Positions 1-43,825 of a stretch of DNA of 64,000 nt are shown here, piece by piece. Each line of letters begins with the position of its first letter. Positions within the stretch are counted from its first letter, which is position 1. The notes under the pieces are model-generated. The model had not been told where the DNA came from and made no database searches. It saw only the letters and a program-made list of their open reading frames with translations. This stretch comes from Pocillopora damicornis (taxonomy: Eukaryota): contig NW_020846294.1 in NCBI RefSeq assembly GCF_003704095.1, positions 310,001-374,000 of the forward strand. Reading direction: 5' to 3'. The position numbers were made by a program, and so were the translations under genes.

Positions 1-1989
1 TACGAGCAAATCAGAACTTTTCTGAAAGGAAACAGTGAATTTGAAATCTCTCTGTTGGAGGTACACGGTACTTTTCCCTACCATTTACTCACTGACTTGC
101 TTTGCTATATTGAAAAATTTCGAGAAGCTCTCTATGTTGAGGAACTGGCACGAGCAAGAGTCCTCGCAGAATTAATGGCAGACAAGTACTCCGTGGAAAG
201 CCACCTCTCAGCTGATCCACAATCATGGTTCGGGATTGAAAACATTGTGAGGAGAGAAAGTGACTGTGTTTTCCTGTACATTTCGTACAGAGAGCGGCAT
301 CTTCTTCTCTGGGTATTGAAAACAAATGGAGACACTTGCTTTCGCAAAACTGACAAAGTGGAACTAGACACTCTTATTGACGAGCAAGTTTGCGATGTGG
401 AAGGAATTTTCAAAAAGAGTGCCGCTGGCTTCGGCGTTTTACCCACAGAGAACTGCGAAGATCGATCTTTGGATGACAACGTGACGAAATCTCTTCATAA
501 AGAGAGCCGAGCAAATTTGCGAGGTGAACAAACCAAAGATACTGAAAGAATTCATAAATTGTGCTACAAATGGATCGTCGCACCCGTGGCAGACTTACTT
601 ACAGAGCCCGAAATCATCATTGTGCCGGATCGTTTTTCGTACCGAGTCCCATTTGCTGCCTTGCGTGATGAATCTGCCGGAAAGTATTTATCGGAGAAGT
701 ACAGAATCCGTATCTTCCCTTCACTAACGACTCTCCGAATCATTCAAGAATGTCCAGCGGACTATCACAGTCTAACTGATGCGCTGGTTGTGGGTGATCC
801 TACGGTCGGCGAAGTGCATTACAATGGACGTCTCACTAACTTTACACCATTGCGCTGTGCAAGAAAGGAAGCAGAGATGGTTGGTCGACTGCTGGGCGTT
901 CAGCCTTTGTTAGGAAGTGGCGCAACAAAGCAGGCAGTACTTAAAGCGATACCTTCGGTAAGTCTGATACATCTTGCCGCTCATGGACATCCCGAAAGAG
1001 GAGAGATTGCCCTCTCTCCTCAACGCACTACTAACCATACTCCTCAAGAGGAAGACTACCTCCTGACTATGTCCGAAATTCAAGGAGTTCAAGTGCGAGC
1101 TAAACTGGTAGTACTCAGCTGTTGTCACAGTGGGCGGGGATTGGTTAAAAAGGAAGGAATCCTTGGAATCGCTCGTGCATTCTTAGCATCCGGTGCACGT
1201 TCGGTGTTGGTAGCATCCTGGGCTATAGAAGACGAAGCAACGGAGCAGCTCATGAATCATTTCTACGAACACCTTGTGCGTGGAGAAAGTGCCAGTGAGT
1301 CTCTTCACCAGGCCGTTCAATGGTTGAGAAGCAATGGTTTCCCCAAACCTTCCCAATGGGCTCCGTTTGTGCTGATAGGGGATAACGTGACATTTGATTT
1401 TATGAAAAAAGAGTAAGTCTGATTTTAATGAGCAATTTTCTATAATAAACCGATTAGCACACTTAACTTTTTCAATTCAACTTACTTTAGTCGGTTTTTG
1501 TTTGTTTGTTTGTTTGATTTTGTCTTTGTCTTTCATCCATAAAATGTCAAGAAAAAGAAGACGATTTTATTTAGGCTCAGAGCCAGAAGAATTTGATGAA
1601 TCGATTCCTCAATTGGCCTTGAAAAGGAGTTCCTTTTGCATGGAAGACATTCAGAAATAACTGCTCAAGGTTGAAACGATGCTAGACGCTATGACGATGA
1701 GAGTAATCTGAGAAATTTAAGCTGACTTTAAAAAAGTTAACTATATTTTTAAAAAAATCAACAACAATAACCAATTAAAGCATAATTTTGAAGTCACTTT
1801 CGCATAAATCATGGTATATTCGACAATAATTTGGAAAAGTTCGAAAATCATAGTCCATGACATTGAAGAAAAAGTAATTTCTTTCAAATGAACTTGATCC
1901 GTTTGCCTTTTCAGTTAAAATAGTGACAAATGTAAAATGTTTGTTTTTAGGAAAGAAGAACTCAAGGAGGACAAAAATGAAGCAAAGAT
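1..1989 (+). CDS. TPR-CHAT protein, copy 1 (5'-truncated by window edge): end of TPR region plus CHAT (caspase-HetF) protease domain; main exon <1..1412 and small terminal exon 1951..>1989
   Basis: Open frame from position 1, colinear with 8102-9635. CHAT motifs IIVPD..VPFAAL, HLAAHG, LVVLSCCHSG, FLASGARSVLVASW, WAPFVLIG. Donor GA|GTAAGT at 1412/1413 and acceptor TTTTTAG| at 1950 join in frame to KEELKEDKNEAKI. The unspliced form stops at 1416. Confidence 0.9.
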
Positions 1990-2089
1990 NNNNNNNNNNN
2001 NNNNNNNNNNNNNNNNNNNNNNNNNNNNNNNNNNNNNNNNNNNNNNNNNNNNNNNNNNNNNNNNNNNNNNNNNNNNNNNNNNNNNNNNN

Positions 2090-2717
2090 CGTTTGTGCTG
2101 ATGGGGGATAACGTGACATTTGATTTTACGAAAAAAGGGTAAGTCAGATTGTAATGAGCAATTTTCTATAATAACCNNNNNNNNNNCTTAACTTTTTCAG
2201 TTCAACACATAATAGTCGGTTTTTGTTTGTTTTTGTCTTTGTCTCTCATCCATAAAATGTAAAGAAAAAGAAGACGATTTCATTTCGTGCTCAGAGNNNN
2301 NNNNNNTTTATGAATCGCTACCTTAATTGGCCTTGAAAAAGAGTTCCTTTTACATGCAAGATATTCAGAAATAACTGCAGGAGGTTGATACGATGCTAGA
2401 CGCTATGACGNNNNNNNNNNTCTGAGAAACTTCAGCTGACTTTAAAAAAGTTAACTTTATTTTGTAAAAAATCTACAACAGTAACCAATTAAACCATCAT
2501 TTTGAAGTCACTTTCGCGTAAATTATGGCATATGCAACAATAATTTGNNNNNNNNNNAAAATCATAGTCCATGACATTGAAGAAAAAATTGATTTCTTTC
2601 AAATGAACTTGATCCGTTTGCCCTTTCAGTTAAAATATTGACAAATGTAGAATGTTTTTTTTCAGGAAAGAAGAACTCAAGGAGGACAAAAATGAAGCAA
2701 AGATTGGAGCAGAGTGA
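2090..2717 (+). CDS. TPR-CHAT copy 2, 3' fragment only (FVLMGDNVTFDFTKKG, donor at 2138/2139, terminal exon 2666..2717 KEELKEDKNEAKIGAE*)
   Basis: Follows a 100-N gap. Colinear with copy 1 (1364-1989) but with many substitutions. Could be a separate paralog or an allelic haplotype. Confidence 0.6.
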
Positions 2718-5700
2718 NNNNNNNNNNNNNNNNNNNNNNNNNNNNNNNNNNNNNNNNNNNNNNNNNNNNNNNNNNNNNNNNNNNNNNNNNNNNNNNNNNN
2801 NNNNNNNNNNNNNNNNNNNNNNNNNNNNNNNNNNNNNNNNNNNNNNNNNNNNNNNNNNNNNNNNNNNNNNNNNNNNNNNNNNNNNNNNNNNNNNNNNNNN
2901 NNNNNNNNNNNNNNNNNNNNNNNNNNNNNNNNNNNNNNNNNNNNNNNNNNNNNNNNNNNNNNNNNNNNNNNNNNNNNNNNNNNNNNNNNNNNNNNNNNNN
3001 NNNNNNNNNNNNNNNNNNNNNNNNNNNNNNNNNNNNNNNNNNNNNNNNNNNNNNNNNNNNNNNNNNNNNNNNNNNNNNNNNNNNNNNNNNNTCCTCGGTT
3101 TACATCACCATGATCTGGTTTTCAATTCTCTCGTAGCATGCAGACCCGATCATCAAAGAGTTATGAAAATCTGTTGTAGGTATAGGAGATATTAACAAGA
3201 AACAAACGGAAGAGAAAAGTAGGCGTTACTATATCAAAATCTAAAAGATAAACGGAGAAGGGAACAGACAGANNNNNNNNNNNNNNNNNNNNNNNNNNNN
3301 NNNNNNNNNNNNNNNNNNNNNNNNNNNNNNNNNNNNNNNNNNNNNNNNNNNNNNNNNNNNNNNNNNNNNNNNNNNNNNNNNNNNNNNNNNNNNNNNNNNN
3401 NNNNNNNNNNNNNNNNNNNNNNNNNNNNNNNNNNNNNNNNNNNNNNNNNNNNNNNNNNNNNNNNNNNNNNNNNNNNNNNNNNNNNNNNNNNNNNNNNNNN
3501 NNNNNNNNNNNNNNNNNNNNNNNNNNNNNNNNNNNNNNNNNNNNNNNNNNNNNNNNNNNNNNNNNNNNNNNNNNNNNNNNNNNNNNNNNNNNNNNNNNNN
3601 NNNNNNNNNNNNNNNNNNNNNNNNNNNNNNNNNNNNNNNNNNNNNNNNNNNNNNNNNNNNNNNNNNNNNNNNNNNNNNNNNNNNNNNNNNNNNNNNNNNN
3701 NNNNNNNNNNNNNNNNATAAATACAACTTATATAGAAAAGTGACTGCAAATAAGACGGAATCTTTAGAATGGTACAAAGCTCTAGGAAGGGATCAAGTAA
3801 ATTTTTGCTGCGACACAACTAAAATTCTNNNNNNNNNNNNNNNNNNNNNNNNNNNNNNNNNNNNNNNNNNNNNNNNNNNNNNNNNNNNNNNNNNNNNNNN
3901 NNNNNNNNNNNNNNNNNNNNNNNNNNNNTCTTATAGGCAAGCTGTAATGCAAGTTCCATCCTCCTTAGGTTTTTACAATGATCACTTTTTACCGATAATT
4001 TTCATATTCGATCTTTCATTAACTCTTTGCATTCTTCGTTACTTTGCAGAGAAAATTTGAAATCAGTTCCATGATTTTGGTCTTCTACCTATCAAGAGAT
4101 CATTTCTTCTTGAAAGGTGAGCGGCTAAATATTTATTTCAGAAATATAGCGCGCTGAAATGTTTACGATTGCAACTTAATAATGATAGAGATAAATACTT
4201 GTGAATGATGAGTCTGTTTACTCTCACGACTTGATTGCTGTACGGTACATTGATATTGTAAGGAGAAACTACATATTCATCACTACTGTGACGATGTAAA
4301 ATAAGAAGATGCCATATGTTATTTCATGAATCTTATGAGCAACCTGGGAAACAATTTTTCTTCCATCTCAGGTTTTATTTTTTTCATTTTGGTGATTTCT
4401 TGTTACCAACCGTGTGAGTAAAATGTTGTTACACCAGCTATTTGTATATACGTTTGTTTTTCTGGGAAAGTCGAATTTCATTTTTTTACTTTCGTTTTCA
4501 TAAGTCACACCATCAAAATCTGTCGGCAGGGTCTGTGTTCAAAGGTGAACTGTTCCCCTTTTTTTAAAATTTCTATATTTTGATTACTTCTTAATTTCAT
4601 TTTCCATGAATAAAATTGATCTTCTTATTTTAACGAACAAAAAATTTGGAGAACTTGGTATAAGTTGTCGAAGTAACGAGAATGTAATTGAATGAAATGA
4701 AAAGATTTTATTTCATAAATACAGAGATTCACAGTGTAAAGTGCTATCGTTCCGGTTGTACGAACGTTATGTTTTCACAGTCGTTCGCTTTCCACTTTAA
4801 AGTGTAAATTTCAGTTCATATGTGTGAAAGATAAGACATCATATATGGAAAGTACTTGAATGATTTTTATTCACTTGTTGCGATGCATGAAAAACTCAAT
4901 CGTTCGCTGTAAAATTCACGCGTCACATATTAATTTTGGCCTTAATCACGTATCACGTGTAAACCCTTTGGTACCCCCTTTTCAAAATTCAGTTTGACTG
5001 CTCTCGTATGACACTGCAATGAGGTTCAGAAATAGAAATTGCAATTGAAAGTTTCGCGCGACTGTGATAGTTTTCAGGATTAATTGCCAAAACAATTCAA
5101 GCAAGGAAAACCCACTTCCCCAAGTCGACCTTCCTATCCGCCAACCACTATAAAGTGTGAGAAGGACGGTTTTTCCGAATCTTAATATAACTTTCAGCAG
5201 GATAAAACACAGCGAAAGAATGCCAAAAAAAGGGAACATCCCATTTACTTTAATATTTCAATTGTCAAGGGTCGATATGAATTTTATTCACTCAAAGAAT
5301 CTTCAACTTTAAGCTGAGAATCAGGTCAAGTAAAGAACTATACGACTTTAGCTTAAGCGAGTGACAAGAGCGTGCATGCAGGCGGAAAAGCGCCTGTGCA
5401 AGATGAGTAGGAAATAAGAACCTCCTTTATAAAGCAAAGACAATTGTACCGCCATTTCCCGTCATAATGAAATAAGTGACGGCTTACGCTTGCATAGTCT
5501 CTCCTGATTGAAATGACTGAAACGATTTTCTTCTAGAGAAGTCAAAATATTTCTTTAAAACTGATACGTACGAAAAACATTAATGCCATTATTTCAATTA
5601 AAAAGTCGAAGAAAACCTACTTCCTCGGGCGAAAGCGTTATAGAAATTTTGTCCTGTTTTATCTGCCAGGCAGCTTGGTAATCTGTCCAAAACACGCGCA

Positions 5701-6085: not shown

Positions 6086-9000
6086 ATGATGAGTGACGCT
6101 GCAGAAATCCTAAAGTCAGTCCAGATAGGTTTAAATGTCGTCATATTTCTTCTCAACACTGATCGTGGCCTACAAGCGACTGAGTTATGTAATGAATGCA
6201 CAAGTCTACTTCAAAACCTTGACTGTGGTAGTCACCTTAATATCTCTGTTGTAATATCCAATGCATGCTACGCCATGTCTGGTAACGCAAATGCGGAACT
6301 ATATACCAAGAGACTTCTTTACACCTTGCACCACGCTGGAAGACTAACCATTCAACTGGGAGACAAATATAAAGCCCAGTGCGGGTTTGTAGAGGCAAAG
6401 CAACTTTACAATAGCGCACTCATCATCATGCAAACGATTGGTCACAAAAGAGAAGAAGCAATGGCACATCAAAGACTTGGAACTGTATGTATAAGCCTCA
6501 GTGAAATGCAGAAGGCAAAAAAACACCTCGAGAAAGCAGTCATCATCGCGATAGAAACTGGTGACAGACAAGCAGAAGGAAAGAGTAAAGGGAACCTCGG
6601 AAATATGTTTTATCACCTTGGCAAATATCAGAAGGCTGAGGAATGTTACAAGGAAGCACTTGCCATTGCGATAGAAATTGGTCACAGACAAGGAGAAAGC
6701 ACTAGTTACGGGAGCCTCGGAGATGTGTTTAATTCCCTAGGAGAATATCAGAAGGCTAAAAAATATTACAAGAAAGCACTTGCTATCGCGATAGAAATTG
6801 GCGACAGATGTGGTGAAGGAACAGTTAACGGGAAACTCGGAGATGTGTTTCACTCCTTTGGCAAATATGAGAAGGCTAAGGAATGTCACAAGAAAGCACT
6901 TGCCATTGCGATAGAAATTGGCCACAGACAAGAAGAAGAAACAATAAACGGGAACCTCGGAAATGTGTTTAATTCCTTAGGCGAATATCAGAAGGCTAAA
7001 GAATATTACGAGAATGCACTCGCCATCGCGATGGAAATTGGCAACAGAAAAGGAGAAGGAACAAGTATCGGGAACCTCGGAACTGTATTTAATTCCCTAG
7101 GCGAATATCAGAAGGCTCGAGAATATTTCGAGAAATCACTTGCCATAGCGATAGAAATTGGCGACAGACAAGGAGAGGGAACAGTTAACGGGAACCTCGG
7201 AGATCTGTTTCATTCCCTTGGCAAATATCAGAAGGCTAAAGAGTGTCACCAGAAAGCACTAGCTATTGCGATAGAAATTGGCGACAGAAAAGGAGAAGAA
7301 ACAATTTACGGGAACCTCGGCGATATGTTTAGTTCCCTAGGGGAATATCAGCGGGCTAAAGAATGTTCCGAGAAAGCACTTGCCATCGCGGTAGAAATTG
7401 GTGACAGACGAGGCGAAGGAAAAATTAACGGGAAACTCGGAAATGTGTTTCGTTCCCTTAGCGAATATCAGAAGGCTAAAGAATATAACGAGAAAGCACT
7501 TGCTATCGCGATAGAAATTGACGACAAACAAGGAGAAAAAGTAAGTAACGGGAACCTCGGAAATGTGTTCATGTCCCTTGGCGAATATCAGAAGGCTAGA
7601 GTATATTACGACAAAGCACTTGCCATCGCGATAGAAATCGGCGAGAGAAAAGGAGGGTTATTCTTAAGCCTTGGAAATGTTTATTTTAAGCTTCGAAAAA
7701 ATCGGCAAGCTAAAGAATATTTGGACAAGGCAGTTGGCATCAGTATAGCAAGTGGTGACAGAATACTAGGAGCCTACGCTACTGCAAGTTTGGCAGCTGT
7801 TTTTGCTTCAGTGAATGACTGTCAGAAAGCAAAAGAACATTTTGAGAAGGCGCTTACCATCAGCAGAGAATGTGGCTGTAGAAAAGTCGAGGCAATCATT
7901 TACATAAGCCTTAGCAATTTGTACCAATCGCTTGGTGAATGTAGCAAGGCAGAAGATTGTATTGAGAAAGCCTATTCCATAAGCAGCCAAATCGGAGACA
8001 AGATGCTTGAGTTTGAAAGCCTTCTCAGTATTACTCAACTAAAGATATGGCAGTCAGAGGTTGTGGAAGCAAAGGAATATCTCCTTCAATGTATTGCAAA
8101 ATACGAGCAAATCAGAACTTTTCTGAAAGGAAACAGTGAATTTAAAATTTCTCTGTTGGAGGAACACGGTACTTTTCCCTATCATTCACTCACTAACTTG
8201 CTGTGCTACATTGAAAAATTTGGAGATGCTCTCTATGTTGAGGAACTGGGACGAGCAAGGGTCCTCGCAGAATTAATGGCAGACAAGTATTCGGTGGAGA
8301 GCCACATCTCAGCTGATCCACAATCATGGTTCGGGATTGAAAACATCGTGAGGAGAGAAAATGACTGTGTTTTCTTGTATATTGCGTACAGAGAGCGGCG
8401 TGTTCTTCTCTGGGTATTGAGAGCAAATGGAGGCACTTGCTTTCGAAAAACAGATGAAGTGGAAGTAAACACTCTTATTGACGAGCAAGTTTGCGATGTG
8501 GAAGGCATTTTCAAAAAGAGCGCCGCTGGCTTTGGCGTTTTACCCACGGCAAACTGCGAAGATCGATCTTTGGATGACAAAGTGACGACATCTCTTCATA
8601 AGGAGAGCCGAGCACATTTGCGAGGTGGACAAACTAAAGATACCGAAAGAATTCATGATTTGTGCTACAAATGGTTCGTCGCACCCGTGGCAGACTTACT
8701 TACAGAGCCTGAAATCATCATTGTGCCGGATCGTTTTTCGTACCGAGTCCCATTTGCTGCCTTGCGTGATGAATCTGCCGGAAAGTATTTATCGGAGAAG
8801 TACAGAATCCGTATCGTCCCTTCACTGACGACTCTCCGAATCATCCAAGAATGTCCAGCGGACTATCACAGTCTAACTGATGCACTGGTTGTGGGTGATC
8901 CTACGGTCGGCGAAGTGCACTACAATGGACGTCTCACTGAAATTACACCATTGCTCTGTGCAAGAAAGGAAGCCGAGATGGTTGGTCGACTGCTGGGTGT

Positions 9001-9655
9001 TCAGCCTTTGTTAGGAAGTGGCGCAACAAAGCAGGCAGTACTGCAAGCGATANNNNNNNNNNNNNNNNNNNNNNNNNNNNNNNNNNNNNNNNNNNNNNNN
9101 NNNNNNNNNNNNNNNNNNNNNNNNNNNNNNNNNNNNNNNNNNNNNNNNNNNNCAACAAAGCAGGCAGTACTTCAAGCGATACCTTCGGTAAGTCTGATAC
9201 ATCTTGTCGCACATGGAAATGCCGAAAGAGGAGAGATTGCCCTCTCTCCTCAACGTACCACTAACAATACTCCTGAAGAGGAAGACTACCTCCTGACTAT
9301 GTCCGAAATTCTAGGAGTTCAAGTGCGAGCTAAACTGGTAGTACTCAGCTGTTGTCACAGTGGGCGCGGATTGGTTAAAAAGGAAGGAGTCCTCGGAATC
9401 GCTCGTGCATTCTTAGCATCCGGTGCACGTTCAGTGTTGGTAGCATCGTGGGCTCTAGAAGACGAAGCAACGGCGAAGCTCATGAAGCATTTCTACAAAC
9501 ACCTTGTGGGTGGAGAAAGTGCCAGTGAGTCTCCTCACCAGGCCGTTCAATGGTTGAGAAGCAATGGCTATTCTAAACCTTCCCAATGGGCTCCGTTTGT
9601 GCTGATGGGGGATAACGTGACATTTGATTTTATGAATTATAAACCAATATCATAA
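6086..9655 (+). CDS. TPR-CHAT protein, copy 3 (TTC28-like): ~14 TPR units followed by CHAT protease domain, single large coding exon
   Basis: ORF 6005..9655; likely start ATG 6086 or 6089 after a candidate acceptor CAG at 6075-6077. 40-aa GNLG..F.SLGEYQKA repeats. CHAT motifs HLVAHG and LSCCHSG. Interrupted by a 100-N gap (9053-9152) whose flanks overlap. Confidence 0.92.
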   Translation: MMSDAAEILKSVQIGLNVVIFLLNTDRGLQATELCNECTSLLQNLDCGSHLNISVVISNACYAMSGNANAELYTKRLLYTLHHAGRLTIQLGDKYKAQCGFVEAKQLYNSALIIMQTIGHKREEAMAHQRLGTVCISLSEMQKAKKHLEKAVIIAIETGDRQAEGKSKGNLGNMFYHLGKYQKAEECYKEALAIAIEIGHRQGESTSYGSLGDVFNSLGEYQKAKKYYKKALAIAIEIGDRCGEGTVNGKLGDVFHSFGKYEKAKECHKKALAIAIEIGHRQEEETINGNLGNVFNSLGEYQKAKEYYENALAIAMEIGNRKGEGTSIGNLGTVFNSLGEYQKAREYFEKSLAIAIEIGDRQGEGTVNGNLGDLFHSLGKYQKAKECHQKALAIAIEIGDRKGEETIYGNLGDMFSSLGEYQRAKECSEKALAIAVEIGDRRGEGKINGKLGNVFRSLSEYQKAKEYNEKALAIAIEIDDKQGEKVSNGNLGNVFMSLGEYQKARVYYDKALAIAIEIGERKGGLFLSLGNVYFKLRKNRQAKEYLDKAVGISIASGDRILGAYATASLAAVFASVNDCQKAKEHFEKALTISRECGCRKVEAIIYISLSNLYQSLGECSKAEDCIEKAYSISSQIGDKMLEFESLLSITQLKIWQSEVVEAKEYLLQCIAKYEQIRTFLKGNSEFKISLLEEHGTFPYHSLTNLLCYIEKFGDALYVEELGRARVLAELMADKYSVESHISADPQSWFGIENIVRRENDCVFLYIAYRERRVLLWVLRANGGTCFRKTDEVEVNTLIDEQVCDVEGIFKKSAAGFGVLPTANCEDRSLDDKVTTSLHKESRAHLRGGQTKDTERIHDLCYKWFVAPVADLLTEPEIIIVPDRFSYRVPFAALRDESAGKYLSEKYRIRIVPSLTTLRIIQECPADYHSLTDALVVGDPTVGEVHYNGRLTEITPLLCARKEAEMVGRLLGVQPLLGSGATKQAVLQAIXXXXXXXXXXXXXXXXXXXXXXXXXXXXXXXXXXTKQAVLQAIPSVSLIHLVAHGNAERGEIALSPQRTTNNTPEEEDYLLTMSEILGVQVRAKLVVLSCCHSGRGLVKKEGVLGIARAFLASGARSVLVASWALEDEATAKLMKHFYKHLVGGESASESPHQAVQWLRSNGYSKPSQWAPFVLMGDNVTFDFMNYKPIS
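6565..7644 (+). repeat. Coding tandem repeat: nine 120-bp TPR units
   Basis: GGAACCTCGG-like anchor recurs at 6591, 6711, 6831, 6951, 7071, 7191, 7311, 7431 and 7551. Confidence 0.95.
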
Positions 9656-11783: not shown

Positions 11784-14700
11784 CGGAAGCCATTCACCAA
11801 TGTCACCAGTATGGAGCCAGTCATCCTCGTCAATAGTTTCGGCAGTTTTCTTAGGGTCGTGAAGGTAGCCTTTGAAGACGTTGGGACCTTTCAGACAAAT
11901 CTAGAAGAGCAAAATATTAATGATGATATTGCAGTTTAGTTGAGGTTAATACAAATTGATTTTGTTGCAACAAACGATTTGTTTTTCTTAAATGAGGTGA
12001 TCTTAAAAATCCAAGTATTGCTATATGTCAGTCCATTTTACCTCTCCCTGACCATTTTTAGCGTAGTATTCTTTCTCTTCCACGTCGACAAGCTTAATAA
12101 TGTTACAAGGAACTGGAGGGCCAACATGTCCGGCTGCAGAAAGAAGACAATTACAAATAAGTATATAACTATTGATGAGTCGGGTGGTCATTGGTCAATC
12201 AGTTGATATACTCCACCACCAATCAGTCAAACTTTCAATAAGTCAGTCACCTTGCCTATCAGTCAGTAAGGTAAACGTTCAATCAACCGATTAATTTATC
12301 AGTATTTAGAGGCTTGTCACTGAGTAAATCAAACAACTTGAAAAGGTATTACGCCAGCGGCTCAGTCGAACCAGTATATTCAGTGACTCACTAAAAGTCA
12401 GTCAAGCCGCTTGTCTGTTAGTTATTCTGTAAGTCAGTCATTGAGTCGGTCGGTCAGTCAGTCAGTCAGTCAATCAGCAAGTCAGTCAATCGGTCAGTCC
12501 GTCAGTCAGTCTGTTAGTCATTGAGTCAGTCAGTCATTCAGTCTGTCTGTCAGTCAGTCAGTCAGTCTGTCAGTAAGTCATTCGGTCAATCAGTGACTCA
12601 GTCCGTCAGTCAGTTAGTCAGTCGGTCTGTCTGTCGGTCGGTCGGACGGTCGGTCGGTCGGTCGGTCGGTCGGTCGGTCGGTCGGTCGGTCAGTCAGTCA
12701 GTCAACTTATCAGTTTGTCATTCAATCCATTCTTCAGTCTGTCAGTCAGTTGATCAGCTATTTAGTTATTCATCCAGCCGGCCAATCAGTCAGTCAGACG
12801 GTCAGTCAGCAAGTATCTCAGTCATTCAGTCAGTCATTCAGTCACTGACCCACTAGGTCAATTAGCCGGCCAGCCAGTCAGCCAGTTAGCCGGTCGGTTG
12901 GCGAGTCAGTTAGTCAGTCCGCGTGTCATTAGCGCAGCTCATCAGCCTCTGAGTCTGCCAATGACTTCCCCTTTTTGCCAAGAAACACACAAAGAGCTTG
13001 ACATACCTGTTGTGACGTCATTGAACAGCTGGAAGGTGGCAGCAGCTGTGCATTCGGTCTGACCGTAACCCTCGGTCAGCTGAGGAAACAAACGGCCAAC
13101 GATGTACGATAAAATTAACAATATCGAGAGGTAGTTCTGTTTTACTACCAGACAGCCAAGTTAGGCATAACTTGCTCGCCTACGATGACCCTTTTATCCT
13201 ACCCTTCCCATAAAATAGAGAAAATAAATACAGCTTTTGAGTAGCTTTTCGCCCTGAAAGATGTTAGATGTTTGGATACAAATAATCAACTCACGTGACA
13301 TCCCATGATGCATCTGATGAATGTCGTCACCTGAGCTGACAGAGGTGCGGAACCACAAGGCATGTATCGCACGTGACCACCAAGTAAACTCTGTCACGAA
13401 GAAGGAACATATCATGAAAGTTTTTTACTAAAGAATGAATTCGCATAAATACTTTACAATACCACACAGAATGCCTTAGAAACTAAGCAGGGGATAACGT
13501 TTTAAGTGAGAGAAGTGAAAAAAAGTGTAAGTGAGAGCGGGGAAAAAAATTGAAATGAAAGTATTGTCTTCCGATAAAATTTAGGTCGTTTTTGTCAAGA
13601 CTTGAGACAGAAATATTTCTCTTGATAATATTTAAAGGCTAATTATATGGAAATTTCAAGCGATTATCTTTGCAATAGAATAGACTTTGAGCTGAAAATA
13701 CTTTGTCGCTGCCCTTACCCTTGCTTGAGGCATTCATTCTACTACGTTCTGTGATTGGTTAAAAAAACCGCGTCGCCCGATCAAACAATCAGCATCAGAA
13801 CTGACGCCAATGCGCACGCGTCAGTTTTTCTGCATTTCTGATCTTTTGCTTTTTTGTGTTTTCTTTTTTATGTTGAGTCCTTTATAATCACAAAATGTTT
13901 GTAGCAATATTCTTCCTTGTTGTGATTAAATCGGTTTCGACTATATGACAGCTTCATCGAACCGGGCTCCAAGGAGAATATTTACTGGTTGATATATGTA
14001 TTAATGTATATTACCTGTATTTTACGCAGAACCAGATGATCCCATATCGTGTTCTTGCTGATGATTTGCCTTAGAAGGAAAAGTGTCATAATTCGATGTT
14101 TATGGTTTTGCATTCAGCCAAGCAATTCATAAATTTAAGTCATTTAGAACAACTCCCCTATTTTGCATATAGAAAGAAAATAAATCGAGAAGAACTTCCG
14201 TATGAGAAAACGAGGGTTTTTTCTTTTCCAGTGATCGCTTCAAAACAATTTCTCGTTACTACCATGATTAATGGAACCATCCGACTTCTGGCAAATTGTT
14301 TCGCAGCTTTGAAGTTAATGTGTTTTTTCGGTGTTACTCACCTTTTAAGATCATTTTCCTTAGACTTAAGTGCCATTTGAAAAATCCACTTCTTCAGTTT
14401 ACTCTTGGATACCTCAGACATGATCTATCGATTAAGAGAAAAACTTCTTTTCCCTTATATGCATGACATTCACGACGCAAATGACAGAAATCTGGTTTTG
14501 ATAGCATTTTTGCCTTTTTTTTTCTTCACTAATGACTATTTAGGCAAAAAGTGAGGCCAATTGAAAGTCAAAATCTCAATATAAGGAATTAGATGCCGAC
14601 AAAAATCGTTTGGTTGAACATTATCTCAACTCAAAATTCTCAGAGAAAATGTTTGTTTCAGAGTGCAAATAACAAACATCAACCCTTTTCACCCCGTTAG

Positions 14701-41183: not shown

Positions 41184-42251
41184 TCAAACTGATGAAAAGC
41201 TTGTAATCCCCGAATCTCTTACACTTATTCGCTCGTTTCCGCGGTGGATTGAAGCTTTTTTTAATTCTAAATCATCCAAGTTTGAAATGTTTCCGACGCC
41301 GTCTTTTCCCCAAAAATGTTTTGATACTGTCTTCAACATGTCCTTTAAACCTTGGCGATATCTGTCAAAACGCACCAATGAAATGATGGGGGATATGGCA
41401 GAGTTTGAAATTAAAGCGAACCTTGAGAACACACCAAACTGAATCATATTACAAGGAGGTTTCCATTTCCACACGAAGTAAAACAAAATGGCAAAAATGT
41501 CAATTGGGAGGACACAACATGCAAATGCGATCATAATAGCACATACGTTCTTAAAAACTCTGCTGTTTTCGGCGCGATGCTGGGAAACCTCTGAATTTCT
41601 CAGAACCCAAAGAATTCGTGAGTAAGTAAAAATTGTGAAGCAAAAAGGTAGGAACACATTTAAAACCAAAACCACTGCCACAAATCGCTCCATCGTTTGA
41701 CGATTGTCAAATTGTGGGTCCCAGCGGAAGTCGCAGGTTGTTCTATTGTTAACAGACTCGAGGCGAGCGGCGTAGAAATATATTCCGTGTAGGGATACAG
41801 ATGCAAGCCATATAAGTGGAATGATGAATTTACATCTCTTTGGTGTAATGACTGCGGGGCGAAACGGATATACTATCGCCCTATATCTTTCCATAGAAAT
41901 AACAACTAAGCTTTGAATCGAAACAGCTGTTGAGATATCTTGGCAGAAAAACACAAGCTTGCATAAAATTAAGCCCATGATCCCATCGATTAGCCAAGCT
42001 CGTTCACCAAATATGACTTGGCACAGTTGATTTGGAACAGCGAAGATTGAGACCAGCAAGTCTGATGCTGCCATGTTTGCAATGAGGTAGTTTATTGAAG
42101 TCAATGTGCGGGAGTTTCGTGCAGTTATGGCGATAATGGCGGTATTTCCAAGTAGCGAAGTAATAAGTATCAAACTGTAACACAGAATCTTGACCAGTTT
42201 TATCGGAAAAGACTGGTCTTCCAGATTCCCACAAACAGTTGTGTTTGCCAT
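41184..42251 (-). CDS. Rhodopsin-like (class A) GPCR, neuropeptide-receptor-like orphan, 355 aa, single coding exon
   Basis: Seven hydrophobic segments; GN (TM1), NMAASD (TM2), ERY (TM3), W (TM4), ECL2 Cys. Start ATG 42251 (MANTT, N-glycosylation sequon) lies downstream of acceptor TTTTCTCGGCAG| at 42271. Confidence 0.92.
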   Translation of the reverse strand: MANTTVCGNLEDQSFPIKLVKILCYSLILITSLLGNTAIIAITARNSRTLTSINYLIANMAASDLLVSIFAVPNQLCQVIFGERAWLIDGIMGLILCKLVFFCQDISTAVSIQSLVVISMERYRAIVYPFRPAVITPKRCKFIIPLIWLASVSLHGIYFYAARLESVNNRTTCDFRWDPQFDNRQTMERFVAVVLVLNVFLPFCFTIFTYSRILWVLRNSEVSQHRAENSRVFKNVCAIMIAFACCVLPIDIFAILFYFVWKWKPPCNMIQFGVFSRFALISNSAISPIISLVRFDRYRQGLKDMLKTVSKHFWGKDGVGNISNLDDLELKKASIHRGNERISVRDSGITSFSSV

Positions 42252-43825
42252 AGTGGTTTGAGTAGAATACCTGCCGAGAAAAGAGAAATTCATAACTGGG
42301 TTAAAATCATTCGTTACATGAAGATGACAGATCAACTTCAAAATCATACATTTGCTCACGTACTGTAAAAGTTAACATGCACTTTATGCGTATGTGAGTT
42401 CCGCCAGCGTTATTCCATTTGCGCGAAACGTCAAAGAATATTTTAATTTTCTGTGAAACGTGATGTTTAAGTTTAATTATTTTTCCGTGATCCATGATCC
42501 TTGTCGAGGAAACATGTAGCCGTGGGCGTGAAGGAGGATTTAAACTCTATTTGATTGGTGAGTCGTCTTGTTTTGCGGAGATTGAAAAACTTTATGGTTA
42601 TTTTGGCGTTTCAATTAGTGTTAATTAAATCAAATGCAAAATTTGTTGATAATATCCTTGAGATTTTCCAGCAATGGTGGAAAATGAGAAGATTGAGCGA
42701 TTTGCATTGTGAAATAATAAGATGCGATAATATTAATAATATCTCAAATAGTTTATTTAAAATCAATCTTATAACGGACTATAGGTTTTCTCTCCATTTA
42801 AGGATTTAATCCTGACACTTCGTGATCGATATTAGCGATGGCTTATCATGAAACTCATAACTCCTCTTGTCTTGACTAATTGTAGAAACCAGAGTTAGAG
42901 TAATTCTAAAAGCTTAATAGTTAATAATTTACAACAATTTACAATTAATAATTTACAACCCTTGAACTTGAAAACAATCCAATCCGAAGATTCATTAAAA
43001 ATTTCACTTACTCCGAAGCGCTTGGAGTTTACAGGTGTTCAAAAGCTTTTTCTGTTATGGCGTGAGATTGGGGACAAAAGCGATCATTACATTTCGTATC
43101 GTGTGTTTTTTCAGTGTGAAGCAACAAAAGGTGCCGGCGACTAACGAAATTACAGGTTAACACGAAAATCAAATAACACCTAAACAAATAATTTTGGCTG
43201 CCGATTTTCAGTGAATTTTCAAAGAACAATTTTCTTTTAAGGTTCAAGACAATTTTAAGTTTCAAAATAAATATTATGCACTAAAATGCGAAAGTTATAC
43301 ACTACAAAATTAATAAATAGGCCTGAAATGAAATTCTACCTTGGTCTTGATTACACGTTGCCTAGCACTTGACCAAAATCTACCCAGGCGGAAATCCAAA
43401 ATGACGGTGACAGTCTGGGTTCGCTCAAAACTCGTTCCCGTTTGTCTCATTTGATAAAGAGGGAATCATTAATGTTTTCATTAAGACAGTGTTGCCTTGA
43501 TTTTCCAATATTTACAATGATAGACAGTAAATTTCACTTTTCATCTACATTTACTTCCAACCTTTTCTTTTGAACCAGAAACAAAAGTGATATATGTTTA
43601 AAACACATGACATCATCCACCCTTGTCAAATGATCATTTCAATTGTAATGCCTTCTTATCCAAACGTTACTTTGTTTCTTTGCTACATTAGCGAACACTG
43701 AACTACTGCTCGTACTCTAAATATGACAAATCAACCACAAAATTCCCTAAAAGCAGATAAGATGAAACATAATCCAAAAAATCATGTAAGTCATCTGTCA
43801 ATTCACGAGTTTGCTCACAGAGTAC

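What the first reader, a model, noticed from the sequence alone, without database searches (positions are those of the whole stretch)
6565..7644. Nine homogenised 120-bp TPR units with hypervariable helix-A columns
Seen: the frame (LG..F.SLG.YQKA....KALAIAIEIG) is nearly invariant at DNA level while a few columns vary strongly: KSK/TSY/TVN/TIN/TSI/TVN/TIY/KIN/VSN; N/S/K before LG; N/D/T after LG; Y/N/H/S/R/M after F; CY/YY/CH/YF/CS/YN. The flanking TPR units are much more diverged. Known: this pattern of high internal conservation plus variable ligand-facing sites marks fungal NLR repeat domains (HET-E WD40, TPR NLRs) that change specificity by repeat shuffling. Inference: a recombination-diversified recognition surface.
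Basis: partly seen in the sequence, partly recalled or inferred. Interest (0 to 1): 0.75.

Follow-up and report, generated by a model that had tools for sequence, protein, structure and literature searches.

The report
Coral TPR-CHAT gene repeat array
This is the repeat domain of one ordinary member of the large, already published coral TPR-CHAT (TTC28-like) gene family; its nine 40-residue repeats are only about 81% alike in DNA, and family-wide a few residues on the likely ligand-binding side of each repeat change faster than silent sites.

Summary
The nine in-frame 120-bp TPR units are real (6563-7642; TRF period 120, 9.4 copies). They lie in an intronless TPR_12 + CHAT gene (6086-9655). 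It is one of at least 102 paralogues in a pocilloporid coral genome.

They are not "nearly invariant at DNA level". Units are 75.8-87.5% identical in DNA and 60-85% in protein, with pS 0.246. Only 57 of 120 nucleotide positions are invariant. Only 1 of 9 units has its nearest relative in the same gene. This array ranks 23rd of 27 for internal conservation.

These columns lie on the helix-A face that carries the ligand-contacting Asn of LGN/Pins.

Repeat-number polymorphism could not be tested. The family expansion is published (PMC12314368). The scan has reported the same pattern on other DNA of this genome (s1-762906, s1-773005).

The parts
6086..9655 (+). Intronless TPR-CHAT (TTC28-like) gene. 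The open frame from the ATG has 1189 codons plus stop and includes a 100-N assembly gap.
   Evidence: ORF list. Pfam TPR_12 E 5.3e-118 with 11 stretches, and CHAT E 3.9e-08 plus 1.2e-35 for the two halves. Homologues begin at the same Met. Length and stop.
6086..6442 (+). N-terminal helical cap, low to medium confidence in the model.
   Evidence: AlphaFold model: helices 4-24, 28-43, 53-65, 68-97 and 101-118, with pLDDT 41-86.
6443..6562 (+). Diverged TPR unit in front of the array (unit -1). It has a 1:1 counterpart in the paralogues.
   Evidence: 56.7-64.2% DNA identity to the nine units. 86-88% identity to the first unit of paralogues g38 and g36.
6563..7642 (+). Nine core 40-codon TPR units. 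Unit i starts at 6563+120i. Helix A is columns 1-17 and helix B is columns 21-38.
   Evidence: Helix limits from the model, e.g. H161-177 and H181-198, where residue = 160+40i+column.
6581..7573 (+). Fast-evolving codons. Columns 6, 7, 13 and 16 of each unit start at 6581, 6584, 6602 and 6611, plus 120 per unit. Column 2 (6569 plus 120 per unit) is marginal.
   Evidence: Family-wide omega is 1.73, 1.64, 2.14 and 1.67, with bootstrap 95% intervals above 1. Column 2 has omega 1.33 [1.02-1.72]. Coordinates.
7643..8122 (+). Degenerate C-terminal TPR units. The register shifts by a 2-codon deletion.
   Evidence: Translation, weak HMM matches and paired helices up to about residue 679.
8666..9616 (+). 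CHAT caspase-like protease domain with the His-Gly motif (VAHGN, 9206-9220) and the Cys motif (LSCCHSG, 9344-9364).
   Evidence: Pfam CHAT. The motifs align with a solved CHAT protein, 8rot_B, E 3.2e-06. Coordinates.
9053..9152 (.). 100-N assembly gap inside the CHAT domain, flanked by a 27-nt direct duplication (9026-9052 and 9155-9181). It was left unfilled.
   Evidence: Single contigs in runs X12 and X5 join across it, skipping 129 letters.
55..1416 (+). 3' part (CHAT domain) of the upstream tandem paralogue, which has 10 core units and begins before the window.
   Evidence: Pfam CHAT E 6e-55. Paralogue at G000:C2929:309548-310879, 84% identity. Array g38.

Best explanation
Window 6086-9655 encodes one member of the expanded coral TPR-CHAT (TTC28-like) family. 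Its parts, in order, are a helical cap, one diverged TPR, nine LGN-type 40-residue TPR units, several degenerate TPRs, a linker, and a CHAT caspase-like protease with its His and Cys motifs present.

The nine units descend from an older amplification and shuffling of one unit type that is shared with the neighbouring paralogues. They have since diverged to about 81% DNA identity. They are not being kept alike by recent homogenisation in this gene.

Most columns are structural and under purifying selection (pooled omega 0.54 for 36 of 40 columns). Four positions change faster than silent sites across the family, with a fifth marginal. They lie on one face of helix A: columns 2, 6, 7, 13 and 16, the last two being canonical TPR positions 9 and 12. 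That face includes the residue that contacts the ligand in the groove of LGN/Pins.

The most likely working model is a variable peptide- or protein-binding groove that selects the partner which controls, or is presented to, the CHAT protease. The gene family would then supply many specificities.

SHOWN HERE: the gene architecture; the degree of unit divergence; the lack of within-gene homogenisation; omega above 1 at those columns; and their helical phase.

INFERRED: that the face is the concave groove of this protein in three dimensions; that it binds ligands; that unit number changes by unequal recombination; and that the protease is regulated by the TPR domain.
For: ARCHITECTURE. Pfam finds TPR_12 and CHAT. 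His/Cys motifs are present. Named homologues are 'tetratricopeptide repeat protein 28-like' or 'CHAT domain-containing' from Pocillopora, Stylophora and Oculina. The own genome holds at least 102 matches, including a tandem cluster on the same contig.

DIVERGENCE. Unit identity is 75.8-87.5% in DNA, with pS 0.246. That lies in the same range as pS between this gene and its paralogues in unique regions, 0.14-0.32. Only 1 of 9 units has its nearest neighbour within the gene.

NO COLLINEARITY. Core units show no collinearity with the paralogues, while the flank units match 1:1 at 83-88%.

SELECTION. From 263 core units I took 121 disjoint nearest pairs. Global pS is 0.148. Columns 6, 7, 13 and 16 have omega 1.73, 1.64, 2.14 and 1.67, with Poisson P from 5e-5 to 5e-10. 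Bootstrap intervals exclude 1. Pooled omega is 1.78, the local omega is 1.80 (binomial P 4.6e-5), and pS at these columns is the same as elsewhere (0.146 against 0.148).

OTHER LINEAGES. The same five columns have the highest entropy in named Pocillopora proteins (85 units), in Oculina proteins (35 units) and in all 120 homologues (952 units). The single Stylophora protein (10 units) agrees only in part.

STRUCTURE. The model has mean pLDDT 85.8, above 90 across the array, with helix A at columns 1-17. The omega-weighted helical moment of helix A points 9 degrees from column 13 (R 0.39, permutation P 0.002). Helix B has no such moment (P 0.26). Column 13 aligns without gaps to the N of the LGN triplets of Pins/LGN. 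LGN complexes are among the best fold matches at 30-31% identity. In PMC3438535 (passages) those Asn residues bind the ligand backbone in the inner groove. PMC1261162 (passages) lists positions 2, 5, 9, 12 and 13 as the variable concave-face positions of TPRs in general.
Against: No coordinates of the model were available to me. The 'concave groove' assignment therefore rests on helical phase and on homology to LGN, not on measured geometry.

Column 7 lies 120 degrees from column 13 on the helical wheel.

The omega test is family-wide. The nine units of this gene alone are too few to test; their pN at the four columns is 0.30-0.53 against a mean pS of 0.246.

The counting method is Nei-Gojobori on pairs, with no codon model and no explicit treatment of gene conversion.

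No ligand, no expression data and no protease activity are known for this gene.

Unit shuffling is inferred from paralogue comparison only. No allele with a different unit number was seen.
Confidence: 0.7

Rival explanations
1. This particular array would be a highly internally conserved, recombination-homogenised repeat domain of the fungal HET-E / NLR-TPR kind, which currently changes specificity by repeat shuffling within the gene.
For: Some paralogues in the same genome do have such arrays. Mean within-array identity is 96.9% DNA / 93.3% aa on C1684 (4 units), 92.4% / 87.9% on C1433 (4 units), and 90.4% DNA on C1781 (13 units, best pair 99.2%). Unit number varies from 4 to 18 core units per array in the loci examined. 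Among 30 unit pairs at 93% identity or more, the four fast columns hold 22% of nonsynonymous differences against 10% expected.
Against: In this gene, unit identity is 81% DNA / 67% aa. It ranks 23rd of 27 arrays and has only one pair at 85% aa. Within-array pS of 0.246 is as large as between paralogues. 8 of 9 units are closer to a unit of another gene. There is no NOD domain. No joint in four runs skips a multiple of 120.
Confidence: 0.12
2. Ordinary TPR scaffold variation. As in any TPR protein, each repeat differs at groove positions because it touches a different part of one conserved partner. The omega above 1 would reflect divergence after duplication, or relaxed constraint combined with method bias, rather than a diversified recognition repertoire.
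For: PMC1261162 (passages) shows that positions 2, 5, 9, 12 and 13 are the most variable in thousands of TPRs of all kinds. Overall omega of the units is below 1 (0.66). The human homologue TTC28 is described as a cell-cycle protein (PMC12314368 and PMC9145168 passages).
Against: Relaxation alone cannot give omega significantly above 1. pS is equal at fast and slow columns, which argues against a mutational hot spot. The family has at least 102 copies here in tandem clusters. PMC12314368 (section 15) reports 6-362 copies per coral species, with copy-number differences between haplotypes. That is not what a single conserved partner predicts.
Confidence: 0.15
3. Assembly artefact. The number or order of the nine units would be wrong because a short-read scaffold assembly collapsed or mis-joined a repeat array.
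For: The paralogous loci are full of N gaps. This gene has a gap with duplicated flanks in its CHAT domain. No public contig spans the array. Depth over it is inflated by paralogues, up to about 77,000 against about 300 in the flank in run X1.
Against: There is no N within 6563-7642. At 81% identity the units are distinguishable by short reads. Zero-difference contigs from runs of four studies cover 6559-6800 (X1, X12, X5, X7) and about 7270-7405. The frame stays open throughout.
Confidence: 0.08

Closest known systems
Coral TPR-CHAT domain-containing proteins / TTC28-like expansion (PMC12314368, section 15 read; PMC9145168 and PMC6208414, passages read)
   Same: Same architecture: a long N-terminal TPR_12 array followed by one CHAT domain. 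Same tandem clusters, same large copy number and same variable TPR length between copies. The named best hits are such proteins from Pocillopora, Stylophora and Oculina.
   Different: Nothing essential; this is a member. The passages I read do not describe site-specific omega above 1 on one helix-A face, or unit-level shuffling.
Highly internally conserved TPR/ANK/WD repeats of fungal NLRs (Dyrka et al. 2014, PMC4986451, passages read)
   Same: Tandem TPR units of one type, positive selection at a few codons per unit, and selected sites assigned to the concave face. Unit number differs between related genes.
   Different: There is no NACHT or NB-ARC domain; the effector is a C-terminal CHAT protease. 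This array falls well below the >85% internal-identity criterion. Repeat-number polymorphism between individuals is not shown. The host is an animal.
LGN/GPSM2 and Pins TPR domain (PDB 3sf4, 5a7d, 4a1s; PMC3438535, passages read)
   Same: 40-residue TPR period, 'LGN'-type triplets, ungapped alignment at 30-31% identity, and best natural fold matches. The peptide ligand lies in the inner groove, bound by the residue after LG.
   Different: LGN has eight fixed, conserved repeats and GoLoco motifs, and no protease. In the coral family the residue after LG is the fastest-evolving column instead of a conserved Asn.
Prokaryotic TPR-CHAT protease Csx29 of type III-E CRISPR (Craspase), and fungal TPR-bearing CHAT proteases that activate gasdermin (PMC12881547 passages; Craspase papers seen as search listing only)
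   Same: A TPR domain fused to a CHAT caspase-like protease that acts in defence or cell-death signalling.
   Different: No sequence-level relation beyond the domains was tested here. No Cas or gasdermin neighbour was looked for. The only solved CHAT protein that matched by sequence was 8rot_B, at E 3.2e-06.

Membership tests
Coral TPR-CHAT DCP / TTC28-like family | N-terminal array of TPR_12-type repeats | tested here: met
   PF13424 E 5.3e-118 with 11 stretches. The model shows paired helices from residue 101 to 679.
Coral TPR-CHAT DCP / TTC28-like family | Single C-terminal CHAT domain with His and Cys motifs | tested here: met
   PF12770 E 3.9e-08 and 1.2e-35 on the two sides of the N gap. 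VAHGN and LSCCHSG are present and align to 8rot_B. Catalytic activity was not tested.
Coral TPR-CHAT DCP / TTC28-like family | Member of a lineage-specific, tandemly clustered expansion | tested here: met
   102 matches at E<=0.001 in the own genome (95 of 652 first-look candidates were scored, so this is a lower bound). At least six are on the same contig within 40 kb.
Fungal-type highly internally conserved (HIC) repeat receptors | Internal repeat identity over 85% across at least 100 residues (criterion from PMC4986451) | tested here: not met
   Mean amino-acid identity is 67% and the maximum pair is 85%. The criterion is met or approached by other paralogues (C1684, C1433, part of C1781).
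Fungal-type highly internally conserved (HIC) repeat receptors | Positive diversifying selection at specific codons of the unit | tested here: met
   Met family-wide only. Columns 6, 7, 13 and 16 have omega 1.64-2.14 with intervals above 1. This gene alone is too small to test.
Fungal-type highly internally conserved (HIC) repeat receptors | Selected sites lie on the concave ligand-binding surface | tested here: inconclusive
   The helical moment points to column 13 (P 0.002). Column 13 corresponds to the ligand-contacting Asn of LGN (PMC3438535). No 3-D coordinates were available, and column 7 is off-face.
Fungal-type highly internally conserved (HIC) repeat receptors | Repeat-number polymorphism between individuals | not testable with these tools
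   The public runs are kept as contigs of 130-320 bp over the array. None spans it, and no joint skips a multiple of 120.
NLR / STAND receptors | Central NACHT or NB-ARC nucleotide-binding domain | tested here: not met
   No such family appears among the Pfam matches of either part of the protein (29 families matched in part 1, of which the best 25 are shown).
LGN/Pins (GPSM2) family | Eight TPRs followed by a linker and GoLoco motifs | tested here: not met
   The TPR part aligns (E 2e-49 to 3e-51). The C-terminus is a CHAT domain, and there is no GoLoco match.

The most novel reading that the evidence does not exclude
Coral TPR-CHAT genes are a germline repertoire of sensor-proteases that works without an NLR core. 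In this reading, the variable groove of the TPR solenoid binds non-self, symbiont or pathogen molecules. Binding frees the CHAT caspase-like protease to cleave a signalling or cell-death substrate. New specificities arise by point changes at four or five groove residues per unit and by unit shuffling among clustered paralogues. This gene would be one older, diverged receptor of that repertoire.
Probability: 0.25. Interest if true: 0.8.

Novelty: new member of a known kind. Interest (0 to 1): 0.35.

Why it matters
Corals carry hundreds of TPR-CHAT genes of unknown function. Published work reports the expansion and the variable TPR length, but in the text I could read it does not say which residues vary or under what selection.

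A reproducible set of four or five fast-evolving positions per unit names the residues to mutate or swap when looking for ligands. These positions sit on the helix face that binds ligand in LGN, and they recur in Pocillopora and Oculina proteins. The pattern gives a concrete parallel to fungal repeat receptors.

For this particular gene the result is mainly corrective. Its array is a diverged, ordinary member of the family, not a homogenised one. The better examples of homogenised arrays lie elsewhere in the genome.

Tried and rejected
1. FULL PARALOGUE LOCI. I asked fetch from genomes for 13 stretches. I worked with the 60 loci already fetched, so some paralogue arrays are cut by locus ends or by N.

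2. TREE-BASED PER-CODON COUNTING. I did not reconstruct ancestors in any other way. I counted differences between disjoint pairs of extant units instead.

3. A 360-bp super-period. TRF lists one (3.1 copies, 82% matches). From the matrix, mean identity is 82.2% at lag 3, 80.8% at lag 1 and 81.7% at lag 2 (my arithmetic on that matrix). I rejected this as weak.

4. POSITIONAL ORTHOLOGY OF CORE UNITS WITH PARALOGUES. None was found. The best matches are 82-90% and are not collinear.

5. AN ORTHOLOGUE OR ALLELE, to compare unit number. Among the best 120 of 2028 hits, the highest identity is 79%. None was usable.

6. REPEAT-NUMBER POLYMORPHISM AND EXPRESSION FROM PUBLIC RUNS. All four runs laid were short contigs, and nothing spans the array.

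7. MAPPING ON 3-D COORDINATES. The model's coordinates are not given to scripts, so I used the helical phase instead.

8. LITERATURE. I searched for site-specific selection in coral TPR-CHAT repeats and found no such statement. This covers only the open library searched, and supplements were closed.
Full report
WHAT IS THERE

Tandem Repeats Finder reports a period-120 array at 6529-7655: 9.4 copies, 79% matches, score 1306. It lies inside one long open frame, 6086-9655 on the plus strand. Pfam reads that frame as TPR_12 (E 5.3e-118, 11 stretches) followed by a CHAT domain. The CHAT domain is split by a 100-N gap at 9053-9152, giving E 3.9e-08 and 1.2e-35 for the two halves.

In the gene's frame the nine units run 6563-7642, 40 codons each. 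One diverged TPR unit precedes them (6443-6562). Several degenerate units follow, after a 2-codon deletion.

The CHAT part carries the His-Gly motif (9206-9220) and the Cys motif (9344-9364). Both align with a solved CHAT protein, 8rot_B, at E 3.2e-06.

WHOSE GENE

The genome, G000, has 234 Mb in 4393 contigs. The best named protein hits are 'tetratricopeptide repeat protein 28-like' or 'CHAT domain-containing protein' of Pocillopora verrucosa and P. meandrina. Stylophora and Oculina follow. In all, 2028 proteins reached E<=1e-10 among 8000 scored candidates.

The own genome holds at least 102 matches to the part behind the array. Only 95 of 652 first-look candidates were scored, so this is a lower bound. 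Several lie on the same contig within 40 kb. One of them ends in this window at 55-1416.

The expansion of TPR-CHAT genes in corals is published. It covers 6 to 362 genes per species, tandem clusters in non-syntenic regions, and TPR length that varies strongly (PMC12314368, section 15 read). It is also mentioned in PMC9145168 and PMC6208414 (passages read).

IS THE ARRAY HOMOGENISED? NO.
- The nine units are 75.8-87.5% identical in DNA and 60-85% in protein. Mean pS is 0.246, pN is 0.171, and the ratio is 0.70.
- Only 57 of 120 nucleotide positions are invariant. Of the 13 invariant amino-acid columns, 7 use more than one codon.
- I cut 337 ungapped units out of the fetched paralogue loci. Of these, 263 are 'core' units with HMM score of 45 or more.
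- In this gene only 1 of 9 units has its nearest DNA relative in the same gene. The mean best match is 84.9% within the gene and 87.1% between genes.
- By mean amino-acid identity this array ranks 23rd of 27 arrays. That is far below the >85% criterion for 'high internal conservation' (PMC4986451, passages).
- Other paralogues do reach the criterion: C1684 at 93% aa, C1433 at 88% aa, and 7 of 13 units on C1781.
- The synonymous distance between units (0.246) lies in the range found between this gene and its neighbours in unique regions, 0.14-0.32. The units are therefore about as old as the local gene duplications.

SHUFFLING

Flank units match 1:1 between paralogues at 83-88%. Core units give a flat 75-90% against all core units of a paralogue, with best matches out of order. 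Close paralogues carry 9, 10, 11, 13 or 15 core units. This fits gain, loss and exchange of units since the genes split. It is an inference from paralogues only.

SELECTION

Instead I took disjoint nearest pairs of extant units: 121 pairs from 263 units, with mean identity 89.1%. I counted synonymous and nonsynonymous differences per column by the Nei-Gojobori method.
- Global pS is 0.148 and pN is 0.098.
- Four columns exceed the silent rate, with bootstrap intervals in brackets: column 6, omega 1.73 [1.39-2.14]; column 7, 1.64 [1.25-2.08]; column 13, 2.14 [1.75-2.56]; column 16, 1.67 [1.33-2.05].
- Column 2 is marginal at 1.33 [1.02-1.72].
- Pooled, the four columns give omega 1.78 against 0.54 for the other 36 columns.
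- Their own silent rate equals that of the rest (0.146 against 0.148). The local test gives omega 1.80, P 4.6e-5.
- The subset of close paralogues (140 units, 63 pairs) gives the same four columns.
- Columns 2, 6, 7, 13 and 16 are also the five highest-entropy columns in named Pocillopora proteins (85 units), in Oculina proteins (35 units) and in all 120 homologues (952 units). In the single Stylophora protein (10 units) columns 13, 2 and 6 are in the top five, column 7 ties for sixth to eighth, and column 16 is not in the top eight.

WHERE THE FAST SITES SIT

The AlphaFold model of residues 1-719 has mean pLDDT 85.8, above 90 over the array. It gives helix A as columns 1-17 and helix B as columns 21-38.

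On a helical wheel, the omega-weighted moment of helix A points 9 degrees from column 13 (R 0.39, permutation P 0.002). Helix B has no significant moment (P 0.26). Columns 2, 6 and 16 lie within 60 degrees of column 13, while column 7 lies at 120 degrees.

Column 13 is the residue after 'LG'. The array aligns without gaps to the 40-residue TPRs of Pins and LGN (E 3e-51 and 2e-49). LGN-peptide complexes are among the best fold matches at 30-31% identity. In those complexes the Asn of the Leu-Gly-Asn triplets binds the ligand backbone in the inner groove (PMC3438535, passages).

By the alignment to consensus TPRs, columns 13 and 16 are TPR positions 9 and 12. Positions 2, 5, 9, 12 and 13 are the variable, concave-face positions of TPRs in general (PMC1261162, passages).

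'Concave groove' is therefore a supported inference, not a measurement.

POPULATION DATA

20 of the 24 listed runs, from 10 studies, hold part of the stretch. I laid four of them, each from a different study. All are short contigs. Zero-difference pieces cover 6559-6800 and about 7270-7405 in all four runs, and 6986-7117 in X1. No contig spans the array.

The listed joints are single-contig, mostly with short sides, and none skips a multiple of 120. Depth over the array is inflated by paralogues. Repeat-number polymorphism therefore stays untested, and so does expression.

Two contigs join across the N gap, skipping 129 letters. This matches the 27-nt duplicated flanks and points to a gap-closing artefact. 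I left the gap as it is.

VERDICT

Nine units and diverged flanks are confirmed, and half of the listed columns do evolve fast. The central descriptor, 'homogenised, nearly invariant DNA', does not hold for this gene.

The same pattern was reported by this scan on two other pieces of this genome (s1-762906 and s1-773005). My family-wide counts, made independently before I saw those notes, agree with them.

Noticed in passing
window 9026-9181: A 100-N gap (9053-9152) inside the CHAT domain is flanked by a 27-nt direct duplication. Single contigs of two public runs join across it, skipping 129 letters. The 43 extra codons in the frame are therefore probably an assembly artefact. The gap was left unfilled.
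   Followed up: partly
G000 contigs C1684 (L024), C1433 (L020/L030), C1781 (L017/L051): Other TPR-CHAT paralogues have far more homogenised arrays: mean unit identity 97%, 92% and 90% in DNA, with the best pair at 99.2%. Several are cut by contig ends or N, as expected for near-identical repeats in a short-read assembly.
   Followed up: partly
window 55-1416 and 1990-3928: The 3' end (CHAT, E 6e-55) of the upstream tandem paralogue lies at the window start. It is followed by a stretch with eight N runs of 10-444 letters between the two genes.
   Followed up: partly
window 41184-42359 (-): A 391-codon open frame with a rhodopsin-family 7TM receptor domain (PF00001, E 6.4e-41).
   Followed up: no
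window 12432-12844: A long (AGTC)n microsatellite: 103 copies, 73% matches.
   Followed up: no
window 7504 and 7567-7573: In all four laid runs most contigs read C for T at 7504. They also carry a paired 1-letter insertion and deletion at 7567/7573. Depth there is hundreds of times that of the flank, so these are most likely units of paralogues laid on this one, not alleles.
   Followed up: no
pairs of units at 93% identity or more, family-wide: Among 30 very similar unit pairs (21 within one gene), overall pN (0.046) is about equal to pS (0.048). Recently duplicated or converted units therefore evolve with omega near 1 overall, and 2.15 at the four fast columns.
   Followed up: partly
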